This document shows, piece after piece, positions 953 to 27,700 of a stretch of 64,000 nucleotides of DNA. The first letter of the stretch is position 1; every line of letters begins with the position of its first letter. The notes beneath the pieces were generated by a model. That model was not told the DNA's origin. It saw nothing but the letters and a program-made list of their open reading frames with translations, and searched no databases. The stretch lies in the IMG/VR virus record IMGVR_UViG_3300027985_000843, positions 248,001 to 312,000 of that record; one strand, given 5' to 3'. The translations under genes were made by a program, and so were the position numbers.

Positions 953-1028
953 TGGTAGCCGGTGCGAGGATCGAACTCGCCTAGAACTGCTTGTAAAACA
1001 GCCACCGTCGCCAGACGGTTCACCGGCC
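953..1028 (-). tRNA. tRNA-Val(TAC), atypical D arm
   Basis: acceptor GGCCGGT/ACCGGCT, loop TTTACAA, T loop TTCGATC, CCA. Confidence 0.8.
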
Positions 1029-1550
1029 GTGAAGCACCTCCTGCACCCACAAGGTGTTGAGGCGGAGAATCTCCTCCCCGATGCGACGATTGATCTCTCG
1101 GTGGGCCTCGTACATACGGGGCGTAAACTTCCTGTATCGCAAGTGATCCATAGCGGTGCAATCATTCTTGACCCTAGCCCACCCCCACTTGGCGTCAACC
1201 TTCTGACCCCACAACAGAAGAGGCACCGCTTCATACCCGTCGTAGACGTAGTACGGGACGGGTTCGGGGATGCCCTTGAACGCCCGTCGACGGCCAATTT
1301 TACGGGCGATCCACCGAACGACGCAGAAGCCATACTCGCGATCCCGGCCACCAGCTCCATACTCGAAGCCGATACGGCACTTCCCACGGTCGTACACCAG
1401 CTCCTTCTCGGTGAGAGGGCCGTGGATGCCGGAGGTCTCCCAGCTCAAGCCCATGAAGGTGTGAAAGGGTCGGTAGTTCAGGCTCAAGAACTCGACCATC
1501 CTGGCCTGAGCCTTGCGACTCCGGCAGGGCACTGCGATGGCGTAGCCCAT
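1020..1550 (-). CDS. hypothetical protein
   Basis: 176 aa ORF, coupled to upstream gene. Confidence 0.6.
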   Translation of the reverse strand: MGYAIAVPCRSRKAQARMVEFLSLNYRPFHTFMGLSWETSGIHGPLTEKELVYDRGKCRIGFEYGAGGRDREYGFCVVRWIARKIGRRRAFKGIPEPVPYYVYDGYEAVPLLLWGQKVDAKWGWARVKNDCTAMDHLRYRKFTPRMYEAHREINRRIGEEILRLNTLWVQEVLHGR

Positions 1551-2160: not shown

Positions 2161-2265
2161 ATTTATCCCATTGTGCCCCAACCATCATTGGGAACACGAC
2201 CATCCATGAGGGGCGCCTCCCGCCTCGGGACATCGTGAATGCACTTGTGGTTCATATCACTTGAA

Positions 2266-3270
2266 ATGCAACGAATTCTGCTAGTAGAAGACAGCCCGTC
2301 GGACAGAGAAATCTTGAAGTACCTGCTCGAAGAGCAGTTCAAGAAGGAGGTCGTTCTACACGAAGCTCCGTCACTGTCCAAGGCAGTAGAGATTCTCGAC
2401 AAAGAGGGTATCGATTGTGTCGTGCTTGACCTTCAGCTGCCGGACTCCGCAGGTAAAGAGACGTTCCAAAAGCTGTACGCCAGGTACTCACACATCCCGT
2501 TCATCGTGATGACCAACAATAAGGACCGCTTGCTGGCCGTCGAGATGATCCAGCTCGGAGCCGCAGACTTCGTCCTGAAGAATTACACCGACGAGGAAGA
2601 CATCTTCCGACGCATCGTGTTCGCGATCGAAAAGCACAAGAGGAGCGTTCGGGTGGACCCTACTGAAGCGGACAGCTTCCGGCGCGTGTCGAGCGCCAAT
2701 TTCAGGTTGGTGCAAGCTCAGGAGGACGACGCTAGCCCCAGCACCATTCGGAACATCCAAGTCGAGACGACAGCAGCTGTTGCGGATCTGTCCCGCAAAA
2801 CGTTCGCGGCTCTCCAGGAGATCAACATCAGCTTCGCGAAGAACAACATGCAGTGGAGCGAGGTCGCGAAGACAGTTGCCATCCTCGACAAGGAGCTTCT
2901 CAGGGGGCATTCCAACAGGCCCAGCATGCGGTCGCAGATGGACCTGATGGACCATCGCATTCAGGTTCTCGAAGGCGAGGTCAACGGCTTGCAAGAAGAC
3001 GTCACCGAGACGAACATCACAGCCATCAAAGAGAACAACCAGACGGCTCGCACCAAACTGTCCATGTGGACCAAGCTGCTGATCGCGCTCCTGACCCTGC
3101 TCGGTGTTCTCGCCACCGCCGCCGCCACCTACTTCGCCGCCGCTGCCAACGCCAGCAAGAAGGAATACGAGTCCCTGAAGGACTACGACGCCTTGAGGGC
3201 GGCATCCACCGCTGCGGCACCGAAGAAAGCCCCGGCAACCCTAGACCCAAATCCAAAGAGTAGCAAATGA
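2266..3270 (+). CDS. response-regulator receiver fused to coiled coil and C-terminal TM segment
   Basis: ILLVEDS, VVLDLQLPDS (phospho-Asp), GAADFVLK; hydrophobic LLIALLTLLGVLATAAATYF. Confidence 0.85.
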   Translation: MQRILLVEDSPSDREILKYLLEEQFKKEVVLHEAPSLSKAVEILDKEGIDCVVLDLQLPDSAGKETFQKLYARYSHIPFIVMTNNKDRLLAVEMIQLGAADFVLKNYTDEEDIFRRIVFAIEKHKRSVRVDPTEADSFRRVSSANFRLVQAQEDDASPSTIRNIQVETTAAVADLSRKTFAALQEINISFAKNNMQWSEVAKTVAILDKELLRGHSNRPSMRSQMDLMDHRIQVLEGEVNGLQEDVTETNITAIKENNQTARTKLSMWTKLLIALLTLLGVLATAAATYFAAAANASKKEYESLKDYDALRAASTAAAPKKAPATLDPNPKSSK

Positions 3271-4418
3271 CTGACACCACGAGGCCCGTTCCGGAACCCC
3301 TCCCGGAATGCGACTACGACTATCAGTGCCCGCGAAGAGAGATTCTCAGCCGGCTGTACGGGATCATGAAGGCCATCCCCGATTCTGTGTTCGAGATCGA
3401 CAGAGAGGGGCGGCATCTGTTCGTGCATGCCAACGGGGATACCCCTACGGACCCAAGACGGATCAAGGGGATGACCCTTCAGGAGCTGCTACCCGAAGAC
3501 ATTGTCGAGCCCACCATGCAGGCCATTCAACAAGTCCTGGAGACGGGGCAAAACATGACCCTGGACTACTCCATCCCACCCGCCGAAGGCAGCGGCGGTC
3601 CGGTGAGGCACCTCCAGGCGCACCTAGGCCGAACGCCCAACATGACCGTCGTGGCGATCGTCCGAAATGTGTCTGACCTGGTCGAACACCAGAAGAAGCT
3701 CCTCGAAGCAAACCAAGCCCTCACCCAATTCACATCCCTCGTCTCCCACGACCTGCGAGAACCCCTCACCGGGATTGCAGGCTTCGCTACCCTGTTGCAA
3801 AACCGCTACGAGGGCGATCTCGACGAACGAGGCCAACACTTCCTGGACCGGATCGTGGAGGTGTCGAAGCAAATGGAGAAAAAGCTGGACGACCTTCTCG
3901 CTTTTTCAAAGGCCGGAAAGGAGACGCCCTTCGAGCCCTTCCCCTTCGGAGCCGCCGTAGAGGAGGCAAAACGAGCCCTAGTACGAAAAATCGCTACCAC
4001 TGGAACGCGCATCGAGATCGTCGGAGAGTTGCCAATCGTGCACGGGGATCGAAGTCTTATCGCTCAAGTCTTGCAGAATCTGTTTTCGAACTCGATCAAG
4101 TACAGACGGAAAGACGAGACGCCCCACATTACGATCGAGGTAACCTCTCACGACCTTCCCTTCTGGAAAGTTGCCGTGAAGGACAATGGTATCGGCTTCG
4201 ATATGCGACACCGGGACAAGATTTTTGGAGTTTTCCAGCGCCTGTACACGGTCGAGCAGTACCCTGGAACAGGAATCGGCCTCGCTATCGCACGCCGTAT
4301 CATCGAGCGCCATGGGGGAGACATCTGGCCTTGGTCCGAACCAGGAGCCGGAGCCACATTCTACTTCACTCTACCCAAACCGACGGTCGACGATCATGGT
4401 GGATATCCTGCTGGTTGA
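3267..4418 (+). CDS. PAS-domain sensor histidine kinase (HisKA + HATPase)
   Basis: SHDLREPL H-box, QNLFSNSIKY N-box, DNGIGF G1, GTGIGL G2. Confidence 0.95.
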   Translation: MTDTTRPVPEPLPECDYDYQCPRREILSRLYGIMKAIPDSVFEIDREGRHLFVHANGDTPTDPRRIKGMTLQELLPEDIVEPTMQAIQQVLETGQNMTLDYSIPPAEGSGGPVRHLQAHLGRTPNMTVVAIVRNVSDLVEHQKKLLEANQALTQFTSLVSHDLREPLTGIAGFATLLQNRYEGDLDERGQHFLDRIVEVSKQMEKKLDDLLAFSKAGKETPFEPFPFGAAVEEAKRALVRKIATTGTRIEIVGELPIVHGDRSLIAQVLQNLFSNSIKYRRKDETPHITIEVTSHDLPFWKVAVKDNGIGFDMRHRDKIFGVFQRLYTVEQYPGTGIGLAIARRIIERHGGDIWPWSEPGAGATFYFTLPKPTVDDHGGYPAG

Positions 4419-13102: not shown

Positions 13103-14269
<1,167 letters not shown>

Positions 14270-17022: not shown

Positions 17023-17246
17023 TGGACCACGATGACCTTCCGACCTTCACCGGTCTTGCCTCCAGCCGGGAGAGCTAACGCCGTCGTGGCGGCGACCCAT
17101 CCGGGTCGGGATCTATCTTGATCCAGGGGGTTTGCCCTGAGGGGAAGGCCCCTGGAACGTGCGGCAACCAACCGCTTCTTCGTGAGGAGATCACGCCTCA
17201 CTAGCCACTGGTCAGGTGGCACGTTGTATTCGCCCCGAAGGGAGAA

Positions 17247-17389
17247 GGTCGGCCGTCCCGGAGTCGAACCGGATGCTTGTAAGGGTCGAAGGAGCTGCTT
17301 CCCTTGCGAGAAGCGAGGTACGACACTGGAAAGAGCTTTTGGCTCCAGCTCCTAAATGCTGGCGGGGGACCCTCCCCCTATGACGGCCA
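17247..17389 (-). ncRNA. tRNA-like RNA A with ~70-nt variable-arm domain (8-nt loop ATTTAGGA)
   Basis: acceptor, D hairpin, CCAGC/GCTGG arm, insert ending CTTACAAGC, T loop TTCGACT. Confidence 0.85.
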
Positions 17390-17444
17390 AGGGGCTTCGA
17401 CGTGTGATCCCACTCAACCCTGAAGTCAAATGCACGCCGAAGCT

Positions 17445-17555
17445 TGGTGGACCGCCCTGGAATTGAACCAGGTGTGCTTGTGAGAACCGCCGAGCAGCAT
17501 TGCCGAAGCAACGCGAGGTGGTGGTGCTGGTAAGTGGAATCCTATCCAGCGGCCC
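17445..17555 (-). ncRNA. tRNA-like RNA B: acceptor + T arm + family domain, no anticodon arm, encoded ACCA
   Basis: GGGCCGC/GCGGTCC-ACCA, UUCG-capped helix, CTCACAAGC, T loop TTCAATT. Confidence 0.8.
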
Positions 17556-17558
17556 ATT

Positions 17559-17580
17559 GCCCGTCTTTCCGGGCTGTCAC
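17559..17580 (-). ncRNA. GTGACRGC-hairpin motif copy 2
   Basis: GTGACA-GCCCG-GAAAGA-CGGGC, 3 nt before RNA B. Confidence 0.6.
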
Positions 17581-17674
17581 CTCAATCCCTCTGAATCTGC
17601 CAGGACTTCGAGGGTCGTCGAGGTTACGAGTTGGTGGTCCCCGTTACCACGCCATACCCACGTGCGAGAACCAG

Positions 17675-17814
17675 CGGGCCGCCCTGGATTCGAACCAGGT
17701 GTTGCTTGTAAGAGTCGTGAGGCAGCTCCCCTTTCAAGGAGCGAGGTACGACGCTGGAAAGAGCGTTGTGCTCCAGCTTAAGAGGCTGGTGGTCTGCCAT
17801 TGACCGTGCGGCCC
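17675..17814 (-). ncRNA. tRNA-like RNA C (anticodon CTT, Lys) with ~70-nt variable-arm domain
   Basis: GGGCCGC/GCGGCCC, D arm GGTC-AATGGCA-GACC, CCAGC-CTCTTAA-GCTGG, insert, CCTGG-TTCGAAT-CCAGG. Confidence 0.9.
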
Positions 17815-17922
17815 AAACGCCCCATTCTCTCGGCTCAGTCCCATGGCACCGTTTGTGGTCCGATGGCTACCTCGCCAAGACAGCGTGAGGCACGCTGTAG
17901 GAGTCGCGATCTCCTAAATTTT

Positions 17923-18085
17923 GAAGCACTCGATGGATACGCCTGGGTAGCTTTGATGCTTGCGCCTAATGCAAGTGCCTGTACCAGTTCGGCTACTCCG
18001 CCATTGAGCGGGCCTCGCGGCCCTGGTGGCGGAGGTGGGATTCGAACCCACATATGCGTGTAAGACGAGTCGAGCTGAGTGCTTC
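17923..18085 (-). ncRNA. circularly permuted family member P1 (Leu-TAG-like)
   Basis: order: GAAGCACTC...CTTACACGC, T arm, CTCCGCC-ACCA, 21-nt linker, GGCGGAG, D arm, CTTGC-ATTAGGC-GCAAG, ...GAGTGCTTC. Confidence 0.85.
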
Positions 18086-18228
18086 GGAGGGCCATCCTGG
18101 AGTTGAACCAGAGAGCTTGTAAGGGCTGCGTGGCAGCTCCCCGTGAAGGGAGCGAGGTGCAACACTGGGTGAGCGTTGTATGCTCCTCCGTGGAAGGGAG
18201 GTGAGGAACCGATCCTCTGTGATGGCCC
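18086..18228 (-). ncRNA. tRNA-like RNA D (anticodon TCC, Gly) with variable-arm domain
   Basis: GGGCCAT/ATGGCCC, CCTCC-CTTCCAC-GGAGG, insert ending CTTACAAGC, T loop TTCAACT. Confidence 0.85.
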
Positions 18229-18231
18229 GAA

Positions 18232-18253
18232 GCTCGTCTCTCCGAGCTGTCAC
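18232..18253 (-). ncRNA. GTGACRGC-hairpin motif copy 3
   Basis: GTGACA-GCTCG-GAGAGA-CGAGC, 3 nt before RNA D. Confidence 0.6.
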
Positions 18254-18396
18254 CCCGTCACGAAACTCGACCAAAGGTACACGCAGGTTTCCAATCTGCA
18301 TTGTCCTGGTGCCCCAGGACTGAACCAGAAGCAGAGTTAACTCGACACCGAGGTTGTGAGAAAGTGGAGGCGTTCGAGGCGAAGTGCTGGATTTTG

Positions 18397-18469
18397 ATGC
18401 TAGAGACAGGAATCGAACCTGTAACCAACGGCTTGATAGGCCGTAGCTCTACCTATGAGCTACTTTAGC
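18397..18469 (-). tRNA. tRNA with ATC anticodon (nominally Asp, A34) on a non-Asp body
   Basis: GCTAAAG/CTCTAGC, A73, ACGGC-CTATCAA-GCCGT, canonical D and T arms. Confidence 0.8.
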
Positions 18470-18499
18470 GTGTGAGCACGTCTGGGCTGAACGCCTTAG

Positions 18500-18640
18500 A
18501 GGGGAAGTCTGGAGTCGAACCAGATTTGGCTTGTAAGGGCTGCTTGGCTGTCTCCCTTTCGAGAGACGATGCGCAACACTGGAAGAGCTGTTTAGCTCCC
18601 GCTTTCCTGGCGGGTGGGGCACCGTGCCCCTAACTTCCCC
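18500..18640 (-). ncRNA. tRNA-like RNA E (loop CAGGAAA, A33) with variable-arm domain
   Basis: GGGGAAG/CTTCCCC, CCCGC/GCGGG arm, GAAA-capped helix, CTTACAAGC, T loop TTCGACT. Confidence 0.85.
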
Positions 18641-18748: not shown

Positions 18749-19327
18749 TCAGAGGCGGCTCGCCCCGTTCTTGTGGGCGTAGAAGCCTACCTGTCGACCA
18801 TCCTCGATGAACTGCTGTACCGAGAAGGCCATGTAGCTCGATACGAGGGCAATGAACGGTAGGAACTCGCCACCCTCACAGGTAGCAGCCCCAGCCACGT
18901 CCTCGTCATCGATCTCGAAGTTGGCGTCCCACACGACCTGGCCGAACGTACCGTCGGGCGCGAGGGCACCATGCAGGCAGGGGGTGCCCGCCTTGCGGAC
19001 GAACTTCTGAACGGTTCGGCGAGCCTCCCCATTGTCCAAGCAGTCGAGCACAAGGTCAGCTCCACCAAGAAGCGCCTCGACGTTGTCTGAGACCATCTTG
19101 TGGGGATTCGTCTTGATCTTGAGCCCGAACAGGAACTGGAGACTCTGTGCGAGACCTAGGACCTTGTTCTTGCCCACCGACGGTTTGCCGTGGAACTGGG
19201 ACTTGACGTTCTTCTGCTCCACCCGGTCGAAGTCGATCAGGGTGAAGTCGGCGTCAAAGTTGCGAGCGAACTGCATGAAGTGGGATCCAAGGGCCCCGAC
19301 TCCTACCACAACGATCTTCATCTTCAT
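18749..19327 (-). CDS. ThiF/MoeB-family E1-like adenylating enzyme
   Basis: VGVGALGS, DFDRVEQKN, LDCLDN, candidate catalytic Cys in ATCEG. Confidence 0.9.
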   Translation of the reverse strand: MKMKIVVVGVGALGSHFMQFARNFDADFTLIDFDRVEQKNVKSQFHGKPSVGKNKVLGLAQSLQFLFGLKIKTNPHKMVSDNVEALLGGADLVLDCLDNGEARRTVQKFVRKAGTPCLHGALAPDGTFGQVVWDANFEIDDEDVAGAATCEGGEFLPFIALVSSYMAFSVQQFIEDGRQVGFYAHKNGASRL

Positions 19328-20268
19328 CCTTCCAAGTCCTTGTAAGACCTGCGACTGATAATTCTACCCATAGCAGAATCAGTGATTCCAAACTTTCGGG
19401 CCAGAGAGGCTTTTGTCCAACCTTCAGCAAAAAGACCACGTGCTTCCAATACTTGGTCGTCGGACAGCTTCCTGGATGGCTTCCAATTTGGCTCCCGAAC
19501 AAACCTTAACTTGTATAAACAACAAGCCGGGAGATGGTTCTCTACCAGGGACTTGAGCTTCACGGCCTCAGCTTTTGTGTTCACAGCTATCTTGAACTGT
19601 CCTGGTCGAACAGAGCTTTCCCGAACTACAGTACGTACACCCAGCGAGCCTAGCTTCTCGGAGAGTCGAGAGACACAACCCTCAGAAAAACCATCTGTGC
19701 AGAAAAATAACTGACCTTGTCGATCATAGGTACCGTCGCCTGCAAACCACTGAGCAACAGACAAGGGTGTCAAGACAAGGTCAGAGGGAACTATCTTCAC
19801 ACCCCTGGGGTACCACCTAGCCCGCTGAGTTTTGAACTCACTGTAACAAGGTGTATACAGCAAACGACCGCCCCGCCCATGAATGACACGATCACCCAAG
19901 CACTTGGACCGAGGTGGGACGGGAATGATGGCGGATTCACAACCGTGTTCTACAAGCAGCACAGTCAAAGAGTCCAACCAACCCAACCGAACACGGCCCT
20001 GCTCCAATCGAAGACTCCCCTTAGGGTCCAAGGAGCCATCCCCCAAAAGGACGCCTTCTAAGACCTGCGACACAAGGTCCCAGTCGGCTCGGTGCTCTCG
20101 ATCACCTAGATACCTTGCATTCTGTTCCTTAGAGGAACGTACGAGAACACCCGTCTTCTTCAAACGATTGAGAACATTCCATGTAGAGCAACCAAGTCGG
20201 CGAGCGATAGAGGACGCGCTCTCGCCCGACAGATAGGCTTCGGTCAAAGCTTGGTGATCCATGATCAA
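19324..20268 (-). CDS. free-standing LAGLIDADG homing endonuclease with terminal HTHs
   Basis: LEGVLLGDGSL and AQWFAGDG motifs; inserted between Ubl and E1. Confidence 0.85.
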   Translation of the reverse strand: MIMDHQALTEAYLSGESASSIARRLGCSTWNVLNRLKKTGVLVRSSKEQNARYLGDREHRADWDLVSQVLEGVLLGDGSLDPKGSLRLEQGRVRLGWLDSLTVLLVEHGCESAIIPVPPRSKCLGDRVIHGRGGRLLYTPCYSEFKTQRARWYPRGVKIVPSDLVLTPLSVAQWFAGDGTYDRQGQLFFCTDGFSEGCVSRLSEKLGSLGVRTVVRESSVRPGQFKIAVNTKAEAVKLKSLVENHLPACCLYKLRFVREPNWKPSRKLSDDQVLEARGLFAEGWTKASLARKFGITDSAMGRIISRRSYKDLEG

Positions 20269-20293
20269 AGCCTACCAAACGGTTTATTCGGTG

Positions 20294-20533
20294 TCAACCA
20301 AAAGGTGTTTTGGGCCTGACCATGATCCTGTTGGGCAGGTCCTCGGTCGCCGAGAACCGCTGGACCACGAAGTCCTTGAACTCGACGTCATCCGCAGCCG
20401 TGATGCCCTGGACGTCGCCGCCCGTGACTGCCTCTTGGGCCCACGCAAGGATCTGCGCGTCCGAAGCGTCGAATTCGACCTCGTCCTTCAGGTCACCGTT
20501 CTGACCGTTCCAAGTGATGTTGAGCAGTGCCAT
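20294..20533 (-). CDS. ubiquitin-like (beta-grasp) protein ending in Gly
   Basis: 79 aa, C-terminus RIMVRPKTPFG-stop, next to JAB and E1. Confidence 0.7.
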   Translation of the reverse strand: MALLNITWNGQNGDLKDEVEFDASDAQILAWAQEAVTGGDVQGITAADDVEFKDFVVQRFSATEDLPNRIMVRPKTPFG

Positions 20534-20569
20534 GTTGAGTTCTCCCTTCTCTGGTTCTACATCTCGTCC

Positions 20570-20938
20570 CTAGTACAGGGACAGCTCGTGAAGCTTCGCG
20601 GTCCAAGGAGGCCGCATGATCACGGGCAAGGACTTGTACGAGAGTCGATCACGACCGACCCAGTAAGTGTGGATGAAGACACTGTCTGCCCAGATCCACC
20701 AGTCAAGCCGGCGACCGAGGCCAGACTCAATCGCCGCAAAGGTTGTGATGTCCGTGAAGGATGGGCTCCCGAAGCCACTGGGATGACTATGAGCGAACCC
20801 TGATAGGTTGTCCCGGTTCGCCCAGATGATGTCCCAAAGGTCTTGCGAGTCAGGCAGGGCTCCCCCGGATCGATCGTTCGGGGTATGCCAGAAGAGAGGC
20901 TCTCCCCGAAGGTCAAGAAGTACGCCTGCTTCCCTCAT
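20570..20938 (-). CDS. JAB/MPN (JAMM) metallopeptidase, DUB-like
   Basis: N-terminal Glu, HSHP, PSFTD. Confidence 0.85.
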   Translation of the reverse strand: MREAGVLLDLRGEPLFWHTPNDRSGGALPDSQDLWDIIWANRDNLSGFAHSHPSGFGSPSFTDITTFAAIESGLGRRLDWWIWADSVFIHTYWVGRDRLSYKSLPVIMRPPWTAKLHELSLY

Positions 20939-21138
20939 GACGGTAGTTGTTCCGAGTTCGGCTGCTTGGACTTGATCCAGGCATAGGCAATGTCGCCCAC
21001 CGGAGGCTGGTCACGAGCCCACTGCTTGAGTGAGATCCTGCCGCCTGTCTCGGCCTTCCACTTGCGGATCATCCGACGCCTATCGGAGCGACCCACGCCT
21101 GTGTACTTCTCTTCCATCTTCATCTCCTCAGTGAACAT
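20935..21138 (-). CDS. small basic hypothetical protein
   Basis: 67 aa, overlaps both neighbours in the operon. Confidence 0.55.
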   Translation of the reverse strand: MFTEEMKMEEKYTGVGRSDRRRMIRKWKAETGGRISLKQWARDQPPVGDIAYAWIKSKQPNSEQLPS

Positions 21139-22069
21139 GACGGAACACCACGAGGGCGTTCGTGTCCTGCGCTTCCAGGATGACTGAGGGCAGAGACTCT
21201 AGAGTGAACCAAGTGTCTCCCCTTGTCCCCCTGTTAAAGTCCCTGCTGTCGTATTCAGCAGTCAGGCAGATGCCGGAGTCGATGATCCGAAGGGAGCTAT
21301 CGCAAGTGCATTCGAACCGTCGACCGTTGAGGCGAAAACGAACGATGTGCTCGTTGGCGTTGTACCCGTTGCGGTGGTCGATAAGCTGGGCACCACCAAC
21401 AGCCAAAGCTGCCCGGACACCCTCCTCGAAATCCTCAAACGCCAAGAGTCGTCGACCCTCACTCGTGCCAATCCGTTCGATGGCCCGCTGACGGCGCTCT
21501 TCCGCCTCCCGACGCTTGCGGTCTTCTTCCCGACGCCTCACTTCCTCGGCCCGCCACCAGCATTCAACCTGGAAGGTGGCATCAAGGGCAGGGGTAACCC
21601 CCGGGATGTCGTTCACGCTCTTGGACTCGTCCAGGAACGCCTGTAGAACGGCCTCCTCAGGCCCCGTAGGAAACTCTTGGTTCTCGAAGATGAACGGGCC
21701 ATCCTCGTAGAACTGTCCCACGGACACACGCACGAACTTGTCTAGGCCGGGCTCTACGAGATGAGCCCGACGAAAGTTCTTGACGATGGCCTCGATCTTG
21801 GGCTCAACACGAGCTGCATTCTCGGGAACGAACAAGTCCCCGACGAGGTAGCCCCTCTGGGTGTTCCGAAGAGCACCCATGGGGGCTTCCACCGACTTCT
21901 CCCAAGTGGCCTTGCGGCCTTCGAGGCGGAACTGGTGCCACCCGTGTTCGGGTGGCCGACGCCCCTTGAGCTTCCAGGTGCGATCGAAGGTACGGATGGA
22001 CCCCTCGCCTACCCACGGTGTGACAAGCGAGCTGTCCTCATTGGTCTGCAAGAGGTCCTTCCAACCCAT
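21128..22069 (-). CDS. hypothetical protein, C-terminal domain possibly E2-like
   Basis: 313 aa; charged helix then ...IIDSGICL... resembling the E2 G.ICL active-site segment (function inferred). Confidence 0.7.
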   Translation of the reverse strand: MGWKDLLQTNEDSSLVTPWVGEGSIRTFDRTWKLKGRRPPEHGWHQFRLEGRKATWEKSVEAPMGALRNTQRGYLVGDLFVPENAARVEPKIEAIVKNFRRAHLVEPGLDKFVRVSVGQFYEDGPFIFENQEFPTGPEEAVLQAFLDESKSVNDIPGVTPALDATFQVECWWRAEEVRRREEDRKRREAEERRQRAIERIGTSEGRRLLAFEDFEEGVRAALAVGGAQLIDHRNGYNANEHIVRFRLNGRRFECTCDSSLRIIDSGICLTAEYDSRDFNRGTRGDTWFTLESLPSVILEAQDTNALVVFRHVH

Positions 22070-22077
22070 GTATCACC

Positions 22078-23952
22078 TCACGCCGCAATGGCCCATGCAG
22101 GCTTGCGGAGGATCTCCGTGTTGAGGATCTGTTCCACGAGGCTGACACGCGGGGCGGCCTTGGGAACTCCACCTGTCACCTGGCCCACCGGAGTGGCAGC
22201 GATGAGTGCGCGGACGGTACGCGGGATTGCGTATGGGTCCTTGAACACCTCTTCGTCGACACGGAAGCACGGAATGTTAAGTGCGGCTGCCGCTTCCTGT
22301 ACCACGTGATAGCCGCTGTTGCCCAGGCGAAGCAATCCGAAGGCCGTCGGGTTGATGCCCGATGTCTGAACCGCGTTGACCAGCTGAGTAGGGCCACCGA
22401 AGTCCTCTTCGTCTCCGATGAAGATGAAGATCGCGTCAGTGCCGTCAGCAGGCTTGATCTTGCTCAGGGCCTTGACGCCGGCCGCGTACGAAGTACCGCC
22501 TCCGGCACGGATGCCGAAGAAGGCTTGACGCACACCCGCAGACGATGCCTTCTTGATTGCGATCTCGCGACCGACGGTGTTGAAGATCGCGACGTGGATC
22601 TTGTCGAGCGGAAAGCTGCCGACGAACTTCTCGACATACTGCTTGGCGGCCTCGATGGCAGGGCCCATCGAGCTGGAGACGTCGACGAAGAAGTAAGGCT
22701 CGATACCCTTGACCTCTTCCTCGACAGCCTTCTGAGCTGCCGCGTCAGCCGCGTTTTCGAGCTGTTCCTTCAGTTCCTTCGACTTGACGTTGCGGGCCAG
22801 ATTCGCAGCACGCTGGTCCTCCGCCTGCTTCGTCGCCGTCTCCCACCGCTGCCGGATGTCCTGGACCTTGAGCAGGCCCAACTCTTCGAGCGTTGGAGTG
22901 AGGATGATCAAGTCCTTGTCGGACACGCTCTTGGCCTCGATGGCCGCCGCCATGATGGCACGGGTCAGACCCATGTTCTTCGGGAGGCGCCCCGTGAGGA
23001 GCTTGAAGCTCGGCTTGCCTTGGATGATCTTCTCGCACACTTGCTCTTCGGTCAGGCCCTCCCAAGAGTCTTCCTTGGAGAAGTCCTCGCCGATGCCGAT
23101 GGTCCGACGACCATCGTCAGCTTGCTTCTGCGTCCAGCCCAGGATCTCGTAGAACTTCGAGGTCGACGGCTTGTAGCCCGAGCACTTGGCGAGCTTGATG
23201 ACCGTCTTCTTGAAGCCGGCCTTGGCGAGCCCCTCCAGCAAGGGAAGATTGTCCTCCCGATGCTTGAGCCACTGCCGAACCACCTTCGACCAACGACCGA
23301 GGAACGGCTTGCGAGCGGAACGCCCGAACCCGAGTTCGCGGTTGATCTTCGCAATCCCGTCCAAGCACAGAACGTCGTGGATGCGCATGAGGAGCTTGGC
23401 GTCCAGATGCCGACGGTCCTTGCGGATGTGCAGGCACATGGCCTCACCAACCTCGCGGAAGTCCTCATCGAGGAACGTCTCGTCCTCGTCGCGGATGGGG
23501 TCTCCCTTACGGCTCTGGACCAGCATGAAGGCCGCGAGGATGACCTTCAGGTCCTTGTGCTCCTGAGGGTAGGCGAACGACGCCCAGCGGGCCGCGAATT
23601 CGTTGTCCAAGGCCCACACGTCAGCCACCTGCTGGTACATCCACGTGGCGACCTCCGGGAAGATGCCAGGCTTCTGGTATCGTCCGAGCTTCCGGCGGTC
23701 GTCGCTCCGAACCGTGCCATCCTCCCAGAGCTGACCGACCTTCTGGTTGGCCTTGCCCTTGGTCACGAGGTAGACGACCTTTTTGCCGTCCTCCACCTTG
23801 TGCGTGCAATACTGCCACTTCACACCCACCACCGAACTCGCGTCGGTGGACACGAACCCAGGACGGTTGTGGACCGCGTGGCCGGAGTAGTTGATGAGGG
23901 TGTTGATGACCTTCTCAGCAGGTCCCAGTGTCTCGTTGGCTACCATTTTCAT
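22078..23952 (-). CDS. TROVE-like helical domain + vWA domain (divergent Ro60/Rsr-like)
   Basis: vWA MIDAS FFVDVSSSM, GGGT, FIFIGDEE; upstream helical region with GRWSKVVRQW resembling the Ro60 segment (TROVE call moderate). Confidence 0.75.
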   Translation of the reverse strand: MKMVANETLGPAEKVINTLINYSGHAVHNRPGFVSTDASSVVGVKWQYCTHKVEDGKKVVYLVTKGKANQKVGQLWEDGTVRSDDRRKLGRYQKPGIFPEVATWMYQQVADVWALDNEFAARWASFAYPQEHKDLKVILAAFMLVQSRKGDPIRDEDETFLDEDFREVGEAMCLHIRKDRRHLDAKLLMRIHDVLCLDGIAKINRELGFGRSARKPFLGRWSKVVRQWLKHREDNLPLLEGLAKAGFKKTVIKLAKCSGYKPSTSKFYEILGWTQKQADDGRRTIGIGEDFSKEDSWEGLTEEQVCEKIIQGKPSFKLLTGRLPKNMGLTRAIMAAAIEAKSVSDKDLIILTPTLEELGLLKVQDIRQRWETATKQAEDQRAANLARNVKSKELKEQLENAADAAAQKAVEEEVKGIEPYFFVDVSSSMGPAIEAAKQYVEKFVGSFPLDKIHVAIFNTVGREIAIKKASSAGVRQAFFGIRAGGGTSYAAGVKALSKIKPADGTDAIFIFIGDEEDFGGPTQLVNAVQTSGINPTAFGLLRLGNSGYHVVQEAAAALNIPCFRVDEEVFKDPYAIPRTVRALIAATPVGQVTGGVPKAAPRVSLVEQILNTEILRKPAWAIAA

Positions 23953-25203: not shown

Positions 25204-25557
25204 TTACCGCCGGCTGACACCGTTGCCAGCCCGAACCTTTCCTTTGATGTCTCCACACGTCACGCTGTTGCCAGCTCGAACGTTCCCCTGAACGTTCCCG
25301 CACGTGACGCTGTTGCCACCATGAACGTCTCCCGAGACGTCCCCACACTCGACAGAGCCGCCGGCCTCCAGGGAGGCTAGAGGGCCCTCCCAGACGACCT
25401 TGACGACCCCTTGCAGACCGTCTGTGACCTTAGCACCGTTCACGTAGAGGGTGTCGTTGGTGATGGTCACGCTACTGCCCGCAGGGGCCTCGTAGACCTT
25501 GCCGTTGATAGTGATGCGGTTCGCCCGGATGCCCGGCTTACGAAAGGGATTTTCCAT
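25204..25557 (-). CDS. Gly-rich beta-helix-type repeat protein
   Basis: repeated G.V..GNSVTCG units. Confidence 0.75.
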   Translation of the reverse strand: MENPFRKPGIRANRITINGKVYEAPAGSSVTITNDTLYVNGAKVTDGLQGVVKVVWEGPLASLEAGGSVECGDVSGDVHGGNSVTCGNVQGNVRAGNSVTCGDIKGKVRAGNGVSRR

Positions 25558-25575
25558 CCCACCAACATACACCAG

Positions 25576-25646
25576 AGCGGGTGACGGGAATCGAACCCGC
25601 ACCTGGAGATTGGCAACCTCCTGCTCGACCTTCGAGCTACACCCGC
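25576..25646 (-). tRNA. tRNA-Gly(GCC)
   Basis: cloverleaf, loop TTGCCAA, U73. Confidence 0.95.
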
Positions 25647-25652
25647 AATTCG

Positions 25653-25796
25653 AGGCATCCGAGAAGAAGGGCTGTGAGTGCTTACGCACGGATTTTCTGT
25701 CCGCTGCTCATCCGATTGAGCTGTCTCCCCATAAGTGGCGGGGAGAGTAGGAGTCGAACCTACAATTGCTTGTGAGACCTTCACGGCTGGATGCCT
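25653..25796 (-). ncRNA. circularly permuted family member P2 (Phe-GAA-like, A33)
   Basis: AGGCATCC...GAAGG-TCTCACAAGC, T arm, TCTCCCC-GCCA, CTTAT linker, GGGGAGA, D arm, GCGGA-CAGAAAA-TCCGT, ...CCTTC-TTCTC-GGATGCCT. Confidence 0.85.
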
Positions 25797-25884
25797 TGGT
25801 GCCGGGAGGGGGATTCGAACCCCCACGCCCACTATGGAGCACCAGTTCCTGAAACTGGCGTGTCTACCATTCCACCACCCCGGC
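25797..25884 (-). tRNA. tRNA-Leu(CAG)
   Basis: loop TTCAGGA, long variable arm, CCA. Confidence 0.95.
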
Positions 25885-25889
25885 AGGGG

Positions 25890-26705
25890 TTACTTGGCCG
25901 CGTCTAGCACGGCCTTCAATTCAGGATGGATCTTCTTGCCCATGACGTACATGGCGAAAGCATCTGCGAAGTTCTCTTCAGGGTTGGTGCTTCCGTAGGA
26001 GGACACCGACAACCCTTCCGCCGAGAGGGCCCAGAACTTGTCCTTGAGATCCTTCGAGAGAAACTTGTTGCGGTACCGGTGACCAAGCTCGTGGACGATG
26101 GTGAACACATCGCCCTCTCGCTTCTTCGCATTCACGTCGACATACACCTTGTCGGACGACCAGGCATACTGTGCGGCTGCCACACCACCTATCTTCTTGG
26201 ACAGGTAGATGTCCCCGTAGATGACCTTCGGGAACCTGGCCTTCAACTTGACGGCCGCCGCACCAATGGCCTCAAGAGGCGCCTTCTGCTTGGCTGCGGG
26301 GATACCAGGAAGGGTTATCACCTTGAACCCGTGAACTTCTACGGCTCGATCGGGATCATCCGCCTTGACAGCAGTGTCCAGGGTCTTGAGCCTTTTGCCC
26401 CACGCTTCAAGAAGTCCCGCCACGTAGCTTCGTTGACGGTCTGAGGAAACATCCAACAACTGTCGGAGTTTCCTGCCTTGGCTGTCCAAGTAGACCACGT
26501 TCTTCCGCTGAGAGGGGCCTAAGCCATGGAACCATGCGGGTGGCTTCCCACCGGGTGGTAGCGTGATGCCCAGAACCTTCTCGACGAACTCTTGCATCGC
26601 GGGGATGTCGCCGGCCCTGTACCTGTCCAGGACATCTTGGAACTCCACGGTCAGACTTCCCGCAGCAGTCAAGTACCTGTGGACCACTCTGTCAACGACG
26701 CTCAT
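25890..26705 (-). CDS. zincin-like metallopeptidase with DRVVHRYL leader
   Basis: VHELGH and YG.TNPEENFADAF motifs. Confidence 0.75.
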   Translation of the reverse strand: MSVVDRVVHRYLTAAGSLTVEFQDVLDRYRAGDIPAMQEFVEKVLGITLPPGGKPPAWFHGLGPSQRKNVVYLDSQGRKLRQLLDVSSDRQRSYVAGLLEAWGKRLKTLDTAVKADDPDRAVEVHGFKVITLPGIPAAKQKAPLEAIGAAAVKLKARFPKVIYGDIYLSKKIGGVAAAQYAWSSDKVYVDVNAKKREGDVFTIVHELGHRYRNKFLSKDLKDKFWALSAEGLSVSSYGSTNPEENFADAFAMYVMGKKIHPELKAVLDAAK

Positions 26706-26779
26706 ACAACAACCACAGGATAAAAGGGTTCCGACGTCCGATGGGAAGAGCTGGTTGCGTATTAACGAGATAGGCTCAG

Positions 26780-26861
26780 AGCCGGGTGTGGGACTCGAAC
26801 CCACGATGTGTTTCCACGGCTGGTTAACAGCCAGCTGCCTTGGCCACTAGGCTAACCCGGC
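26780..26861 (-). tRNA. tRNA-Asn(GTT) with long variable arm
   Basis: loop CTGTTAA; variable region CGTGGAAACACATC; U73. Confidence 0.85.
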
Positions 26862-27084: not shown

Positions 27085-27588
27085 CTAGTCCTGTCGGGTT
27101 GTCAAAGGTCGCGTGGTAGATCCCTCTACCAGGAAAAACTTCTTCAAGGGTCGCCGACGATACTTCTTCTTGATGTTCCGTCCAGCGAAGGTTGTGGTCT
27201 GAGAGTGACAGTTCGGGCAAAGAAGTCGCAGGTTCTCAATCCTATTGTCTCGACGATCTCCGTTCATGTGGTCGATCTGAAGCACCAGCGACTTACCAAG
27301 CCACTCTGTCAAACCGCACTGACTGCACTGGTCTTCGACTTTGCCTGTCTTCAAGAGGCGTTTCTTGAGCCAAACACCACTGACCACCGGCCCGACTACA
27401 AAAACCTCCTCATCCTTATATAGCCGCAGTTTTCGACACTTCAGGTCGCCTCTCTCTACTGCGGCATCCCATTGACCTCTCGTGAGTGAGAAAGCAGTTG
27501 CTGTGGCTCGACTGGAGTAACCCTCATCGTAATGCCTTTGGACAGCTTCCCAGTCCACATCCCTTGACTTGATCTCCACGTTCGCCAT
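27085..27588 (-). CDS. free-standing HNH homing endonuclease
   Basis: CSQC...LQIDHMNGDRRDNRIENLRLLCPNCH. Confidence 0.9.
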   Translation of the reverse strand: MANVEIKSRDVDWEAVQRHYDEGYSSRATATAFSLTRGQWDAAVERGDLKCRKLRLYKDEEVFVVGPVVSGVWLKKRLLKTGKVEDQCSQCGLTEWLGKSLVLQIDHMNGDRRDNRIENLRLLCPNCHSQTTTFAGRNIKKKYRRRPLKKFFLVEGSTTRPLTTRQD

Positions 27589-27627
27589 TTCCTGTTGAGT
27601 TCTGATAAACAGATCAGGAAACGGTAG

Positions 27628-27700
27628 ATGGGACGGTGGGATTCGAACCCACAACCGCCTGGATCAGAGCCAGGTGCACAGCCAATTGTGCTACGTCCCA
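27628..27700 (-). tRNA. tRNA-Gln(CTG)
   Basis: T1-A72, loop CTCTGAT. Confidence 0.95.

What the first reader, a model, noticed from the sequence alone, without database searches (positions are those of the whole stretch)
25653..25796. Second, independent circularly permuted member P2 (Phe-GAA-like) on the other side of the TROVE operon
SEEN: AGGCATCC-AGCCGT-GAAGG-TCTCACAAGC-AATT, T arm GTAGG-TTCGACT-CCTAC, TCTCCCC-GCCA, 5-nt linker CTTAT, GGGGAGA, canonical D arm, GCGGA-CAGAAAA-TCCGT, GCGTAAGCA-CTCACAG-C-CCTTC-TTCTC-GGATGCCT. The terminal 8-bp helix, internal loop, inner GAAGG/CCTTC helix and CTCACAAGC match the family consensus. The tRNA body is unrelated to P1 (Phe vs Leu; A33). INFERENCE: permutation at the same point on two different tRNA bodies argues for a selected architecture, not a one-off rearrangement.
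Basis: partly seen in the sequence, partly recalled or inferred. Interest (0 to 1): 0.88.

Follow-up and report, generated by a model that had tools for sequence, protein, structure and literature searches.

The report
Permuted tRNA-like RNA in jumbo phage
This 144-base stretch is a real, conserved non-coding RNA gene shaped like a tRNA whose two halves are encoded in swapped order, one of a large unrecorded family sitting beside a VWA-domain protein operon in giant phages; it resembles bacterial YrlA "Y RNAs" but differs in how it is built.

Summary

It is not a one-off. A covariance model built only from 13 relatives in other phage contigs hits exactly 25653-25796 at 92.2 bits (E 5e-21). Fifty-eight members pair at 96% of helix positions, with compensatory changes in 26 of 28 pairs. 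All of these lie on the strand of a conserved 624-aa VWA-domain gene. That gene heads a conserved operon: VWA, 313-aa protein, JAB-like protein, small ORF, E1-like protein. A non-permuted sibling family carries the same CUCG/ACAAGC helix module in its variable region (74 copies outside the window).

The closest known kind is YrlA, the circularly permuted tRNA-like Y RNA beside Ro60. P2 fails YrlA membership: Rfam 23 bits against a cut-off of 69, no GNCGAA motif, and it keeps a full anticodon arm. The "TROVE" label for the protein is unproven: VWA only by sequence, and the fold evidence is ambiguous.

Most likely P2 is a protein-handle-plus-tRNA-mimic RNA cut out of the tRNA polycistron. RNase P probably opens its acceptor loop. 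I rate it a new variant of a known kind.

The parts
25653..25796 (-). P2: whole permuted tRNA-like RNA (144 nt)
   Evidence: R1 covariance model (built without window sequences) 92.2 bits, E 4.9e-21, model 1-148; MFE fold z -3.4
25789..25796 (-). 5' strand of terminal helix AGGCAUCC
   Evidence: Pairs with 25653-25660. All 8 pairs of this helix show compensatory changes in 58 sequences. The orthologue has CGGCAUCC/GGAUGCCG.
25783..25788 (-). Internal loop, 5' strand AGCCGU
   Evidence: Unpaired in the family consensus. Shorter than in most members (6/5 nt against about 8/8).
25778..25782 (-). Inner helix 5' strand GAAGG
   Evidence: Pairs with CCUUC at 25666-25670; inner-helix pairs covary
25768..25777 (-). 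UCUCACAAGC, conserved single-stranded motif before the T arm (variable-region position)
   Evidence: ACAHGY present in 58 of 58 permuted members. ACAAGC also conserved in 74 non-permuted members.
25747..25763 (-). T arm GUAGG-UUCGACU-CCUAC
   Evidence: aligned to the YrlA T arm by Rfam; covariation
25736..25746 (-). Acceptor 3' strand UCUCCCC + discriminator G + CCA
   Evidence: 7 of 7 pairs with 25724-25730. N73-CCA encoded in 22 of 58 members and C74 in 46 of 58.
25731..25735 (-). 5-nt linker CUUAU closing the acceptor stem (candidate RNase P leader, U at -1)
   Evidence: Family linkers run 2-51 nt, and the separate member L084:758-1022 carries a whole tRNA-Pro in its linker. U(-1) in 28 of 58, G+1 in 53 of 57.
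25724..25730 (-). Acceptor 5' strand GGGGAGA
   Evidence: all 7 acceptor pairs covary
25706..25721 (-). D arm GCUC-AAUCGGAU-GAGC (G18 G19 present)
   Evidence: D stem conserved or covarying
25688..25704 (-). Anticodon-like arm GCGGA-CAGAAAA-UCCGU (GAA, A33)
   Evidence: Closest to window tRNA-Phe(gaa). A 5-bp stem with a 7-nt loop at this place in 37 of 58 members, with R37 in 37 of 37.
25678..25687 (-). Small hairpin GCGUAAGCAC
   Evidence: MFE; an equivalent small hairpin in most members
25661..25677 (-). 3' strand of the module: UCACAG-C-CCUUC (inner helix) and UUCUC (internal loop; CUCG motif runs into the terminal helix)
   Evidence: CUCG invariant in the 24-sequence alignment and conserved in both topologies
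25653..25660 (-). 3' strand of terminal helix GGAUGCCU
25797..25884 (-). tRNA-Leu(CAG), 3' end abuts the P2 5' end (0-nt gap)
   Evidence: ARAGORN and Rfam. The same wedging between tRNAs is seen for 10 of 58 members.
25575..25646 (-). tRNA-Gly(GCC), 5' end 6 nt after the P2 3' end
22078..23952 (-).
   Evidence: Pfam VWA_2 only. 68 IMG/VR and 27 genome loci. RNA family on its strand in most loci.
18749..22069 (-). Rest of the conserved operon: 313-aa protein (21128-22069), JAB-like (20570-20938), 79-aa ORF (20294-20533), inserted LAGLIDADG ORF (19324-20268), E1/ThiF-like (18749-19327)
   Evidence: tblastn finds them in 59-62 of 67 loci, same order and strand; Pfam and PADLOC
17924..18084 (-). 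P1, the other permuted member in the window
   Evidence: R1 90.7 bits, E 1.2e-20
17246..18640 (-). Array of five non-permuted siblings (18497-18640, 18085-18228, 17672-17814, 17445-17555, 17246-17389) carrying the same module in the variable region
   Evidence: Model R2 finds more than 100 relatives. 74 relatives outside the window pair at 95.5%.

Best explanation
P2 is a functional non-coding RNA gene of a conserved family of permuted tRNA-like RNAs.

Shown:
- Its order is terminal-helix 5' strand, ACAAGC motif, T arm, acceptor 3' strand-GCCA, 5-nt linker, acceptor 5' strand, D arm, anticodon-like arm, small hairpin, terminal-helix 3' strand.
- Every helix is kept by compensatory changes in dozens of phage and MAG contigs.
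- It lies on the strand of, and close to, a conserved VWA-domain protein operon.
- A non-permuted sibling family carries the same helix module as a giant variable arm.

Inferred mechanism:
(1) P2 is transcribed within the tRNA polycistron. Its ends are made by the enzymes that trim the abutting tRNA-Leu 3' end and tRNA-Gly 5' end.
(2) The bipartite helix with the invariant CUCG and ACAAGC motifs is a protein handle. The adjacent 624-aa VWA protein is the most likely partner. That protein has a helical-repeat region followed by a vWA/MIDAS domain, which is the domain layout of Ro60.
(3) The L-shaped tRNA-like domain is a tRNA mimic presented to tRNA-binding factors.
(4) The acceptor loop (7 bp, G1-C72, U-1, G73-CCA) is opened by RNase P and 3' trimming, as shown experimentally for M. 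smegmatis YrlA. This gives a two-piece RNA with a free CCA end, the same shape as the non-permuted siblings.

In short, it works like a YrlA-type Y RNA but is built differently.
For: Structure and family:
- Independent covariance model: 92.2 bits, full length, exact coordinates.
- 58 members: 96.2% of cells paired against 68.2% in shuffles (0 of 500 reach it); 26 of 28 pairs with compensatory changes; slid controls 34-47%.
- Orthologue L130:8587-8751 sits 1.25 kb upstream of the VWA gene between tRNA-Asn and tRNA-Leu(cag), with an A-U to C-G swap in the terminal helix.

Association with the operon:
- About 55 hits of at least 50 bits in about 37 of 68 IMG/VR loci, all on the VWA strand. The same holds in Myxococcota-type MAG contigs.
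- Reverse search from the RNA motif returned 31 contigs, 17 of them already known VWA loci.
- Operon conserved in 59-62 of 67 loci.

Same module in the non-permuted form.

Processing:
- P2 abuts tRNA-Leu (0 nt) and precedes tRNA-Gly by 6 nt. 10 of 58 members are wedged the same way.
- NCCA in 22 of 58 against about 1.6% by chance; G+1 in 53 of 57; C72 in 52 of 57.
- A complete tRNA-Pro sits inside the acceptor linker of L084:758-1022, so that linker must be cut when the tRNA is matured.

Precedent:
- YrlA has the T-AS-D order beside Ro60, and the 7-bp acceptor stem of M. smegmatis YrlA is cut by RNase P and gains CCA (PMC4201824).
- YrlAs 'resemble circularly permuted tRNAs' (10.1101/312249).
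- A phage Ro60 binds phage-encoded Y-like RNAs (PMC12135203).

Protein:
- VWA with invariant DxSxS.
- Full-length Foldseek top hits are TROVE 9kop and Ro60 1yvr.
- 56 of the 100 nearest ESM-Atlas clusters are TROVE families.
Against: - No expression, end-mapping or binding data exist.
- The protein is not demonstrably TROVE: no sequence hit anywhere. The helical domain alone gives Rsr only at E 0.9, TM 0.34, and nothing in BFVD.
- The YrlA Ro-binding motif GNCGAAN0-1G is absent in 58 of 58.
- Rfam YrlA scores 23.4 bits against a cut-off of 69.
- The partner could equally be the 313-aa, JAB-like or E1-like product.
- Some linkers are only 2-4 nt, so cleavage may not be universal.
- P2 has C8 and A33, so it deviates from a perfect tRNA core.
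- Several genuine members found by motif had no operon within the few kb fetched.
Confidence: 0.6

Rival explanations
1. P2 is a free-standing tRNA mimic or decoy. Its anticodon-like arm copies tRNA-Phe and soaks up or senses a host tRNA-directed factor such as an anticodon nuclease, a modification enzyme or a synthetase. The helix module only stabilises the RNA or sets its ends, and the VWA protein is not its partner.
For: The D/anticodon-arm region is near-identical to the phage's own tRNA-Phe(GAA), with U33 changed to A. Relative L030:1084-1243 also keeps GAAAA in a distorted 9-nt loop. Across the family the arm has tRNA geometry, with R37 in 37 of 37 and U33 in 25 of 37 seven-nt loops, and diverse anticodons that duplicate canonical tRNAs of the same genome. 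The elements sit inside very large phage tRNA arrays.
Against: The anticodon is not conserved between positional orthologues: GAA in P2, CCA in L130. The strongest sequence conservation lies in the helix module (CUCG, ACAAGC), not in the loop. The tight same-strand linkage to the VWA operon needs an explanation.
Confidence: 0.2
2. The RNAs serve the neighbouring E1-like / JAB-like / small-protein cassette rather than the VWA protein. For example, they could act as a tRNA-like acceptor or donor with a CCA end, or as a scaffold for a ubiquitin-like conjugation reaction.
For: The E1-like, JAB-like and 79-85-aa ORFs are as conserved as the VWA gene and lie between it and the main RNA array. The E1 piece matches Cap2-type 'E1-E2' models. 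CCA-like ends are enriched. The window also encodes an EF-Tu.
Against: The 79-aa ORF has no recognisable Ubl domain, and the JAB match is below Pfam's cut-off. No known E1 system uses such an RNA. This is inference from adjacency alone.
Confidence: 0.1
3. P2 is a true permuted tRNA-Phe gene. Like the permuted tRNAs of Cyanidioschyzon merolae, it would be circularised through its terminal helix, opened at the acceptor, and used in translation.
For: The 3' half lies upstream of the 5' half and the acceptor is joined by a short linker after an encoded GCCA. ARAGORN calls the de-permuted core tRNA-Phe(gaa).
Against: A33 replaces the universal U33. The 'leader' helix is not a bulge-helix-bulge motif but a conserved 8-bp / loop / 5-bp module with invariant motifs. 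The non-permuted siblings keep this module intact as an arm, so it is not removed like an intron. A normal tRNA-Phe(GAA) lies 1.5 kb away. 21 of 58 members lack a 7-nt loop. No splicing endonuclease or RtcB was seen among the ORFs scanned, though the window was not exhaustively annotated.
Confidence: 0.04
4. P2 is a chance juxtaposition or a decayed tandem tRNA pair: the T arm of one pseudogene and the D arm of the next. This is the known false positive of YrlA searches. Alternatively it is part of a protein-coding ORF.
For: It lies in a dense tRNA array. R1 gives 25-37-bit partial hits on real tandem tRNAs. ORFs 25467-25832 and 25204-25689 formally overlap it.
Against: The acceptor strands on either side of the linker are perfectly complementary and covary in the family. 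The terminal and inner helices covary. P2 scores 92 bits against 37 or less for tandem tRNAs. A scan for T arm followed by a closed acceptor found 74 sites against 1-7 in shuffles. The overlapping ORFs also span tRNA genes. The PHROG match of ORF 25204-25689 starts only at residue 55, downstream of tRNA-Gly.
Confidence: 0.02

Closest known systems
YrlA (Y RNA-like A; Rfam RF02553), the tRNA-like Y RNA encoded beside bacterial and phage Ro60/Rsr
   Same: Same gene order: T arm, acceptor stem closed by a loop, UA-type joint, D arm, with the 5' and 3' ends paired in a long helix. YrlA is described as resembling a circularly permuted tRNA (10.1101/312249). Both are encoded within a few kb of, and on the strand of, a helical-repeat + vWA protein. 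YrlA also occurs in phages (PMC4201824, PMC12135203). M. smegmatis YrlA, with a 7-bp acceptor stem, is cut by RNase P and gains CCA, which is the fate proposed for P2. Rfam's only non-tRNA hit on P2 is YrlA, covering the T-AS-D core.
   Different: P2 scores 23.4 bits against a gathering score of 69, and no family member in six loci reaches it. The GNCGAAN0-1G motif is absent in 58 of 58. P2 keeps a complete anticodon-like hairpin. The end-to-end helix leaves from the variable-region position, whereas in YrlA the ends form the anticodon stem and there is no anticodon loop. P2 has its own invariant motifs (CUCG, ACAAGC). Non-permuted siblings exist. P2 is embedded in tRNA arrays. The partner protein has no detectable TROVE signature.
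Permuted tRNA genes of Cyanidioschyzon merolae and other algae or archaea (Soma et al. 2007; as summarised in 10.1101/312249)
   Different: No bulge-helix-bulge splice motif. The terminal helix is a conserved functional module rather than a discarded leader. The anticodon loop is non-canonical (A33). The junction lies in the variable region. The setting is bacterial or phage, with no known splicing endonuclease.
Class II tRNAs and tRNA-like RNAs with extra arms (tRNA-Leu/Ser/Sec; tmRNA tRNA-like domain)
   Same: An L-shape core with G18G19 / T-loop elbow. An extra helix emerges between the anticodon and T arms, most obviously in the non-permuted siblings. Encoded CCA. Processed with tRNAs.
   Different: The arm is about 65 nt with an internal loop and invariant motifs, far beyond any class II variable arm. 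P2 is permuted. There is no evidence of aminoacylation or decoding.
Thermus phage phiLo Ro60 with Yrl1/Yrl2 (PMC12135203)
   Same: Phage-encoded small RNAs beside a phage helical-repeat + vWA protein. A 5'-3' stem flanks an internal loop proposed as the protein-binding site.
   Different: phiLo Yrls carry a CGAA bulge motif and are not described as tRNA-like with an anticodon arm. phiLo Ro60 is a recognisable TROVE protein, and the protein here is not.

Membership tests
YrlA (Rfam RF02553) | Score at or above Rfam's gathering threshold (69 bits) | tested here: not met
   23.4 bits, model positions 29-81 only. No YrlA hit at gathering in the window or in six loci with the best family members.
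YrlA (Rfam RF02553) | Order T arm, closed acceptor-like stem, D arm, with tRNA elbow nucleotides | tested here: met
   GG in the D loop and UUCGACU in the T loop.
YrlA (Rfam RF02553) | GNCGAAN0-1G motif near the 5' end (proposed Ro60 contact; PMC4201824) | tested here: not met
   0 of 58 family members, P2 included
YrlA (Rfam RF02553) | 5' and 3' ends form the anticodon-stem equivalent; no anticodon loop (10.1101/312249) | tested here: not met
   P2 has a 5-bp/7-nt hairpin directly after the D arm. The end-to-end helix joins at the variable-region position.
YrlA (Rfam RF02553) | Encoded within about 4 kb of, and on the strand of, a Ro60 (TROVE) orthologue | tested here: inconclusive
   P2 is 1.7 kb upstream of, and on the strand of, the 624-aa VWA gene, but that gene's TROVE identity is unproven.
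YrlA (Rfam RF02553) | Bound by Ro60/Rsr in vivo | not testable with these tools
   Needs immunoprecipitation or EMSA
Ro60 / TROVE protein family (for ORF 22078-23952) | Pfam TROVE (PF05731) or sequence similarity to solved Ro60 | tested here: not met
   No hit in the query, 36 relatives, or 10 distant homologues. PDB phmmer and hmmsearch give VWA proteins only.
Ro60 / TROVE protein family (for ORF 22078-23952) | C-terminal vWA domain with MIDAS | tested here: met
   VWA_2 at residues 421-512; invariant D424, S426, S428
Ro60 / TROVE protein family (for ORF 22078-23952) | HEAT-repeat ring fold | tested here: inconclusive
   Full-length model: top Foldseek hits are 9kop and 1yvr (E 2e-6, about 529 columns, TM 0.17-0.26), only marginally better than VWA-only hits. 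Helical domain alone: generic helical repeats, with Rsr 2nvo at E 0.9, prob 0.63, TM 0.34. ESM-Atlas features 0.89-0.92 to TROVE clusters.
Permuted tRNA genes (C. merolae type) | 3' half upstream of 5' half, acceptor strands joined by a linker | tested here: met
Permuted tRNA genes (C. merolae type) | Bulge-helix-bulge motif at the paired termini, removed on maturation | tested here: not met
   The termini form an 8-bp helix, a 6/5-nt internal loop and a 5-bp helix. The same module persists as an intact arm in 74 non-permuted siblings.
Permuted tRNA genes (C. merolae type) | Canonical anticodon loop (U33, R37) giving a decoding tRNA | tested here: not met
   The P2 loop is CAGAAAA, with A33
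tRNA (RF00005) | Cloverleaf in linear order detected by tRNA models | tested here: not met
   No Rfam tRNA or ARAGORN call on 25653-25796. Only an in-silico de-permuted core with a short variable loop is called tRNA-Phe.
VWA-operon-associated permuted tRNA-like RNAs (family defined here, model R1) | Full-length match to a model built from independent members; all six helices; CUCG and ACAHGY motifs; same strand as the VWA gene | tested here: met
   92.2 bits, E 4.9e-21, positions 1-148; motifs present; strand and distance

The most novel reading that the evidence does not exclude
P2 and its siblings may be the RNA half of an undescribed jumbo-phage ribonucleoprotein system. One tRNA-shaped adaptor with a conserved protein handle would be made in two gene topologies: one-piece with a giant variable arm, or permuted and then split by RNase P. 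Both would end in a free CCA-bearing acceptor. They would work with a Ro60-unrelated or barely related VWA protein and an E1/JAB cassette, for example to bait, tag or neutralise host tRNA-directed defences or to be charged with an amino acid. This would be more than a Y RNA variant.
Probability: 0.2. Interest if true: 0.85.

Novelty: new variant of a known kind. Interest (0 to 1): 0.64.

Why it matters
- tRNA-like Y RNAs are known, but their tRNA-mimic domain has no assigned function. This family gives many natural variants: more than 55 permuted and more than 100 non-permuted copies were detected at the search thresholds used. The same protein-handle module is attached to a tRNA body in two topologies, with the anticodon arm kept.
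- That makes three questions directly testable. Does the mimic need a free CCA end? Which protein reads the handle? Is the anticodon arm read by anything?
- It adds an unrecorded RNA family (absent from Rfam 15) and a conserved VWA / JAB-like / E1-like operon to the biology of jumbo phages that carry near-complete tRNA sets.
- It warns annotators that such elements are missed by tRNA finders, or mistaken for tandem tRNAs.

Tried and rejected
- Megablast of the region against INPHARED phages found no match. tblastn of the VWA protein found one uncultured record only, KX853510.1.
- Sequence routes to TROVE all came back negative: Pfam, PHROGs, PADLOC, PDB phmmer and profile searches, Pfam on 36 relatives and 10 distant homologues, and a profile search of a sister family.
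- Domain-only structure search was inconclusive against PDB and BFVD.
- The promoter and terminator scan around P2 showed nothing above shuffles.
- MAFFT mis-registered the terminal helix in the 24-sequence alignments, so RNAalifold missed it. A 13-sequence subset with flush ends, followed by model-based realignment, solved this.
- I first took the E1-like gene to be split by the LAGLIDADG ORF. I rejected this because in L025 and L130 the 79-120-aa ORF and the roughly 190-217-aa ThiF ORF are separate genes. The LAGLIDADG ORF in the window and an HNH ORF in L025 are free-standing insertions.
- The alternative pairing of GGGGAGA with the downstream UCUUCUC is possible in P2 (7 of 7 with G-U) but occurs in only 7 of 57 members, so it is not conserved.
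- Permuted hits could in principle be artefacts of reading across two identical tandem non-permuted units. I rejected this because P2 is flanked by ordinary tRNAs and P1's acceptor differs from its neighbours'.
- The motif scan of IMG/VR also returned chance matches with no model hit: L103, L108, L110, L113, L117, L125.
Full report
**1. What is in the sequence**

An unconstrained RNA fold gives -53.2 kcal/mol (z = -3.4; 1 of 200 shuffles as good). It draws the following elements:
- the 8-bp terminal helix AGGCAUCC/GGAUGCCU
- the inner helix GAAGG/CCUUC
- the T arm GUAGG-UUCGACU-CCUAC
- a 7-bp acceptor stem UCUCCCC/GGGGAGA closed by G-CCA-CUUAU
- a D arm with GG in its loop
- an anticodon-like arm, drawn with only 3 of its 5 stem pairs
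- a small hairpin

Neither ARAGORN nor the Rfam tRNA model calls it. The only non-tRNA Rfam signal is a sub-threshold YrlA match over the T arm / closed acceptor / D arm core: 23.4 bits against a gathering score of 69.

P2 is wedged in a 45-gene tRNA array. Its first base follows the last base of tRNA-Leu(CAG) at 25797-25884, and tRNA-Gly(GCC) at 25575-25646 starts 6 nt after its last base.

**2. It is more than chance**

The window is part of IMG/VR contig UViG_3300027985_000843 (371,739 bp). I collected 68 viral loci that encode relatives of the neighbouring 624-aa protein.

A simple scan for 'T arm, 7 nt, short linker, perfect complement' found 74 sites in 1.4 Mb, against 1-7 in shuffles. 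Nearly all were on the protein's strand.

Thirteen of these, none from the window, gave an RNAalifold consensus with the terminal helix, inner helix, T arm, closed acceptor and D arm. 22 of 28 pairs had compensatory changes.

The covariance model built from them (R1) finds 25653-25796 at 92.2 bits, E 4.9e-21, model positions 1-148. It finds P1 (17924-18084) at 90.7 bits. The next hits, at 37 bits or less, are tandem tRNAs.

Over 41 sources, 58 members with E of 1e-10 or better align to the model:
- 96.2% of cells form standard pairs, against 68.2% in shuffles (0 of 500 reach the observed value)
- 26 of 28 pairs carry changes on both sides
- sliding the partners drops pairing to 34-47%

That alignment is fitted to the model, which favours pairing, but the margin is very large. 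The seed consensus was obtained without a model.

**3. The family and its surroundings**

All hits of at least 50 bits in the viral loci lie on the strand of the 624-aa gene. The same holds in 27 genome-collection loci, mostly Myxococcota MAG contigs.

The gene heads a conserved operon found in 59-62 of 67 loci: a 624-aa VWA protein, a 313-aa protein of unknown fold, a JAB-like protein, a 79-aa ORF and a short E1/ThiF-like protein. Homing-endonuclease ORFs are inserted in some genomes: LAGLIDADG at 19324-20268 here, HNH in L025.

Downstream of the operon most phages carry an array of tRNA-like RNAs. Five of these in the window (17246-18640) are not permuted. They run acceptor / D-like arm / anticodon arm / about 65-nt arm / T arm / acceptor. 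A model of them (R2) finds more than 100 copies in about 50 loci. Seventy-four copies outside the window pair at 95.5%, against 60% in shuffles, with 35 of 36 pairs compensatory.

The consensus of both kinds shares the invariant CUCG on the 3' strand of the internal loop and ACAAGC just before the T arm. So the permuted RNAs are the same design opened at the tip of the long arm and closed at the acceptor.

P2 is not an artefact of reading across two tandem units. It is flanked by ordinary tRNAs, and P1's acceptor differs from its neighbours'.

A reverse search from the RNA motif alone returned 31 contigs. Seventeen were already known VWA loci, and one more showed the operon in the stretch fetched. 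Several other genuine members had no operon within the few kb fetched, so the linkage is strong but not shown to be absolute.

**4. Orthologue**

In the closest relative with a long contig (VWA protein 67% identical), L130:8587-8751 scores 85.9 bits. It lies 1.25 kb upstream of the VWA gene, where P2 lies 1.7 kb upstream. It sits between tRNA-Asn and tRNA-Leu(CAG) with 1- and 10-nt gaps.

Its terminal helix is CGGCAUCC/GGAUGCCG, a compensatory A-U to C-G change relative to P2. Its linker is 26 nt with a hairpin. Its anticodon loop is CUCCAAA: anticodon CCA with U33 present.

The Phe-like identity of P2 is real. 54 of 71 core positions match the window's tRNA-Phe(GAA), the arm reads GCAGCGGAC[U to A]GAAAAUCCG, and ARAGORN calls the de-permuted core tRNA-Phe. 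But this identity is not conserved. L030:1084-1243, the most similar member elsewhere, keeps GAAAA in a 9-nt loop.

**5. How it probably works (inference)**

(a) Biogenesis. There is no promoter or terminator signal of its own. Ten of 58 members have a canonical tRNA within 15 nt of their 5' end and ten within 15 nt of their 3' end, with gaps of at most 4 nt (5') and 3-12 nt (3'); eight have both. So the ends are most simply made by tRNA 3' and 5' processing.

(b) Acceptor opening. Several features are those of an RNase P substrate:
- G+1 in 53 of 57
- C72 in 52 of 57
- U-1 in 28 of 58
- N73-CCA encoded in 22 of 58 (about 1.6% expected by chance)
- 7-bp stems

Linkers range from 2 to 51 nt in the 58-member alignment. 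In a further member, L084:758-1022, the linker holds a complete tRNA-Pro(UGG), whose own maturation must cut it. M. smegmatis YrlA, the one YrlA with a 7-bp stem, is cut by RNase P and CCA-tailed in vivo (PMC4201824). After such cutting P2 would be a two-piece RNA with the same shape as its non-permuted siblings.

(c) Handle. The best-conserved bases lie in the bipartite helix, which suggests a protein site. The adjacent VWA protein is the obvious candidate, by analogy with Ro60 and Y RNA.

(d) Mimic. The arm after the D stem has tRNA geometry in 37 of 58 members (5-bp stem, 7-nt loop), and within those R37 is present in 37 of 37 and U33 in 25 of 37. Anticodons are diverse and duplicate canonical tRNAs of the same genomes. 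That fits a mimic of tRNAs rather than a decoder. P2 itself has A33 and C8.

**6. The protein**

By sequence the protein has only a C-terminal VWA/MIDAS domain, with D424, S426 and S428 invariant. TROVE is not detected by any of the following:
- Pfam on the query, 36 relatives or 10 distant homologues
- phmmer or profile search of PDB sequences
- a sister-family profile search

An AlphaFold model (pLDDT 81) shows a short beta domain, about 320 residues of helical repeats, then the vWA domain. That layout resembles Ro60.

Foldseek's top PDB hits are the phage phiLo TROVE domain (9kop) and Xenopus Ro60 (1yvr), at E about 2e-6 over about 529 columns. TM is only 0.17-0.26, and VWA-only hits score almost as well.

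The helical domain modelled alone (pLDDT 80) matches only generic helical repeats. D. radiodurans Rsr has the best TM (0.34) but E 0.9. BFVD gives nothing. Language-model features place 56 of the 100 nearest clusters in TROVE families at 0.89-0.92.

I therefore treat 'TROVE' as plausible but unproven.

**7. Comparison with what is known**

The closest known kind is YrlA. It shares the T / closed acceptor / D order, paired ends, a position beside a helical-repeat + vWA protein, presence in phages, and RNase P cutting in one species (PMC4201824; 10.1101/312249; PMC12135203).

P2 fails YrlA membership on three tested features: the Rfam score, the GNCGAAN0-1G motif (0 of 58) and the absence of an anticodon loop. 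In YrlA the ends form the anticodon stem. Here a full anticodon arm is kept and the end-to-end helix leaves from the variable-region position.

P2 is not a C. merolae-type permuted tRNA gene. It has no bulge-helix-bulge motif, the 'leader' is a conserved module retained in the non-permuted siblings, and it has A33.

I found no description of this family or of the operon in the literature searches. A survey of jumbo phages mentions TROVE proteins with a tRNA-like partner only in passing.

**8. Verdict**

The claim of a selected, permuted architecture is strongly supported. 'Independent' permutation and 'TROVE' are not shown.

P2 is a new variant of the known YrlA-type tRNA-mimic RNAs. It belongs to a large family that Rfam 15 lacks. 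Its function is inferred, not shown.

Noticed in passing
window 17246-18640 (-): Array of five non-permuted tRNA-like RNAs with an arm of about 65 nt in the variable region, plus the permuted P1 at 17924-18084. A canonical-looking tRNA-Asp with the unusual anticodon AUC (18398-18469) sits inside the array. The Rfam tRNA model reads 17675-17814 as a 140-nt tRNA (43 bits).
   Followed up: yes
L084:758-1022: A permuted family member whose acceptor linker contains a complete tRNA-Pro(UGG) gene (840-911). Maturing the nested tRNA must split the host RNA.
   Followed up: partly
window 18749-23952 (-) and 59-62 of 67 related loci: Conserved operon: VWA protein, 313-aa unknown protein, JAB-like protein, 79-aa ORF, short E1/ThiF-like protein. 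This resembles a ubiquitin-like conjugation cassette joined to a VWA protein. The 313-aa protein has no recognisable fold (ESM-Atlas pLDDT 0.47).
   Followed up: partly
window 19324-20268 (-); L025:12818-13390: Free-standing homing-endonuclease ORFs (LAGLIDADG here, HNH in L025) are inserted at different places in the same operon. A further HNH ORF lies at window 27085-27654 among the tRNAs.
   Followed up: partly
L039:7441-7593, L047:2779-2930, L025:9043-9181: A third subtype upstream of the VWA gene. It has a 12-bp terminal helix, UCACAAGCA, an extra hairpin, a T arm and an acceptor closed by GCCAYUUAU (the same linker as P2). It has a reduced D arm and no anticodon arm, so it is closer to the classical YrlA layout. 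R1 matches only its core (36-43 bits).
   Followed up: partly
window 13103-14269 (-): A full-length EF-Tu gene (all three Pfam domains, E 6e-52) lies inside the phage tRNA array.
   Followed up: no
window 2239-4418 (+): A response regulator and a PAS-HisKA-HATPase histidine kinase are encoded side by side on the opposite strand to the tRNAs. This is an unusual cargo for a phage.
   Followed up: no
L025:15904-15996; L030:19469-19831: Related phages encode a small SRP RNA (57.7 bits), directly after a permuted tRNA-like RNA, and a tmRNA (109 bits).
   Followed up: no
L069-L095 (genome contigs): Relatives of the VWA gene with the same RNAs occur almost only in Myxococcota-type MAG contigs (Polyangia, Kofleriaceae, Myxococcales). 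This hints at the host range of these phages. One isolate genome also has the gene (Paraliomyxa miuraensis, 799-kb contig, L091), but neither RNA model hits there.
   Followed up: partly
window 953-1042, 12080, 14479, 15469, 16016 (-): ARAGORN's 'tRNA-???' call and four T-arm-like sites are not assigned to any called tRNA. They may be further degenerate or unusual tRNA-like elements.
   Followed up: no
window 25204-25689 and 25467-25832 (-): Mechanical ORFs overlap P2. The first matches PHROG 3163 only from residue 55, so the real gene probably starts below about 25530. The second spans two tRNAs and P2 and is spurious.
   Followed up: partly
window 25890-26804 (-): A 304-aa ORF between tRNA-Asn and tRNA-Leu has a weak metalloprotease-like match: Pfam ATLF at E 8e-5, below the cut-off, and PHROG 87 'metallo-protease' at E 6e-3.
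   Followed up: no
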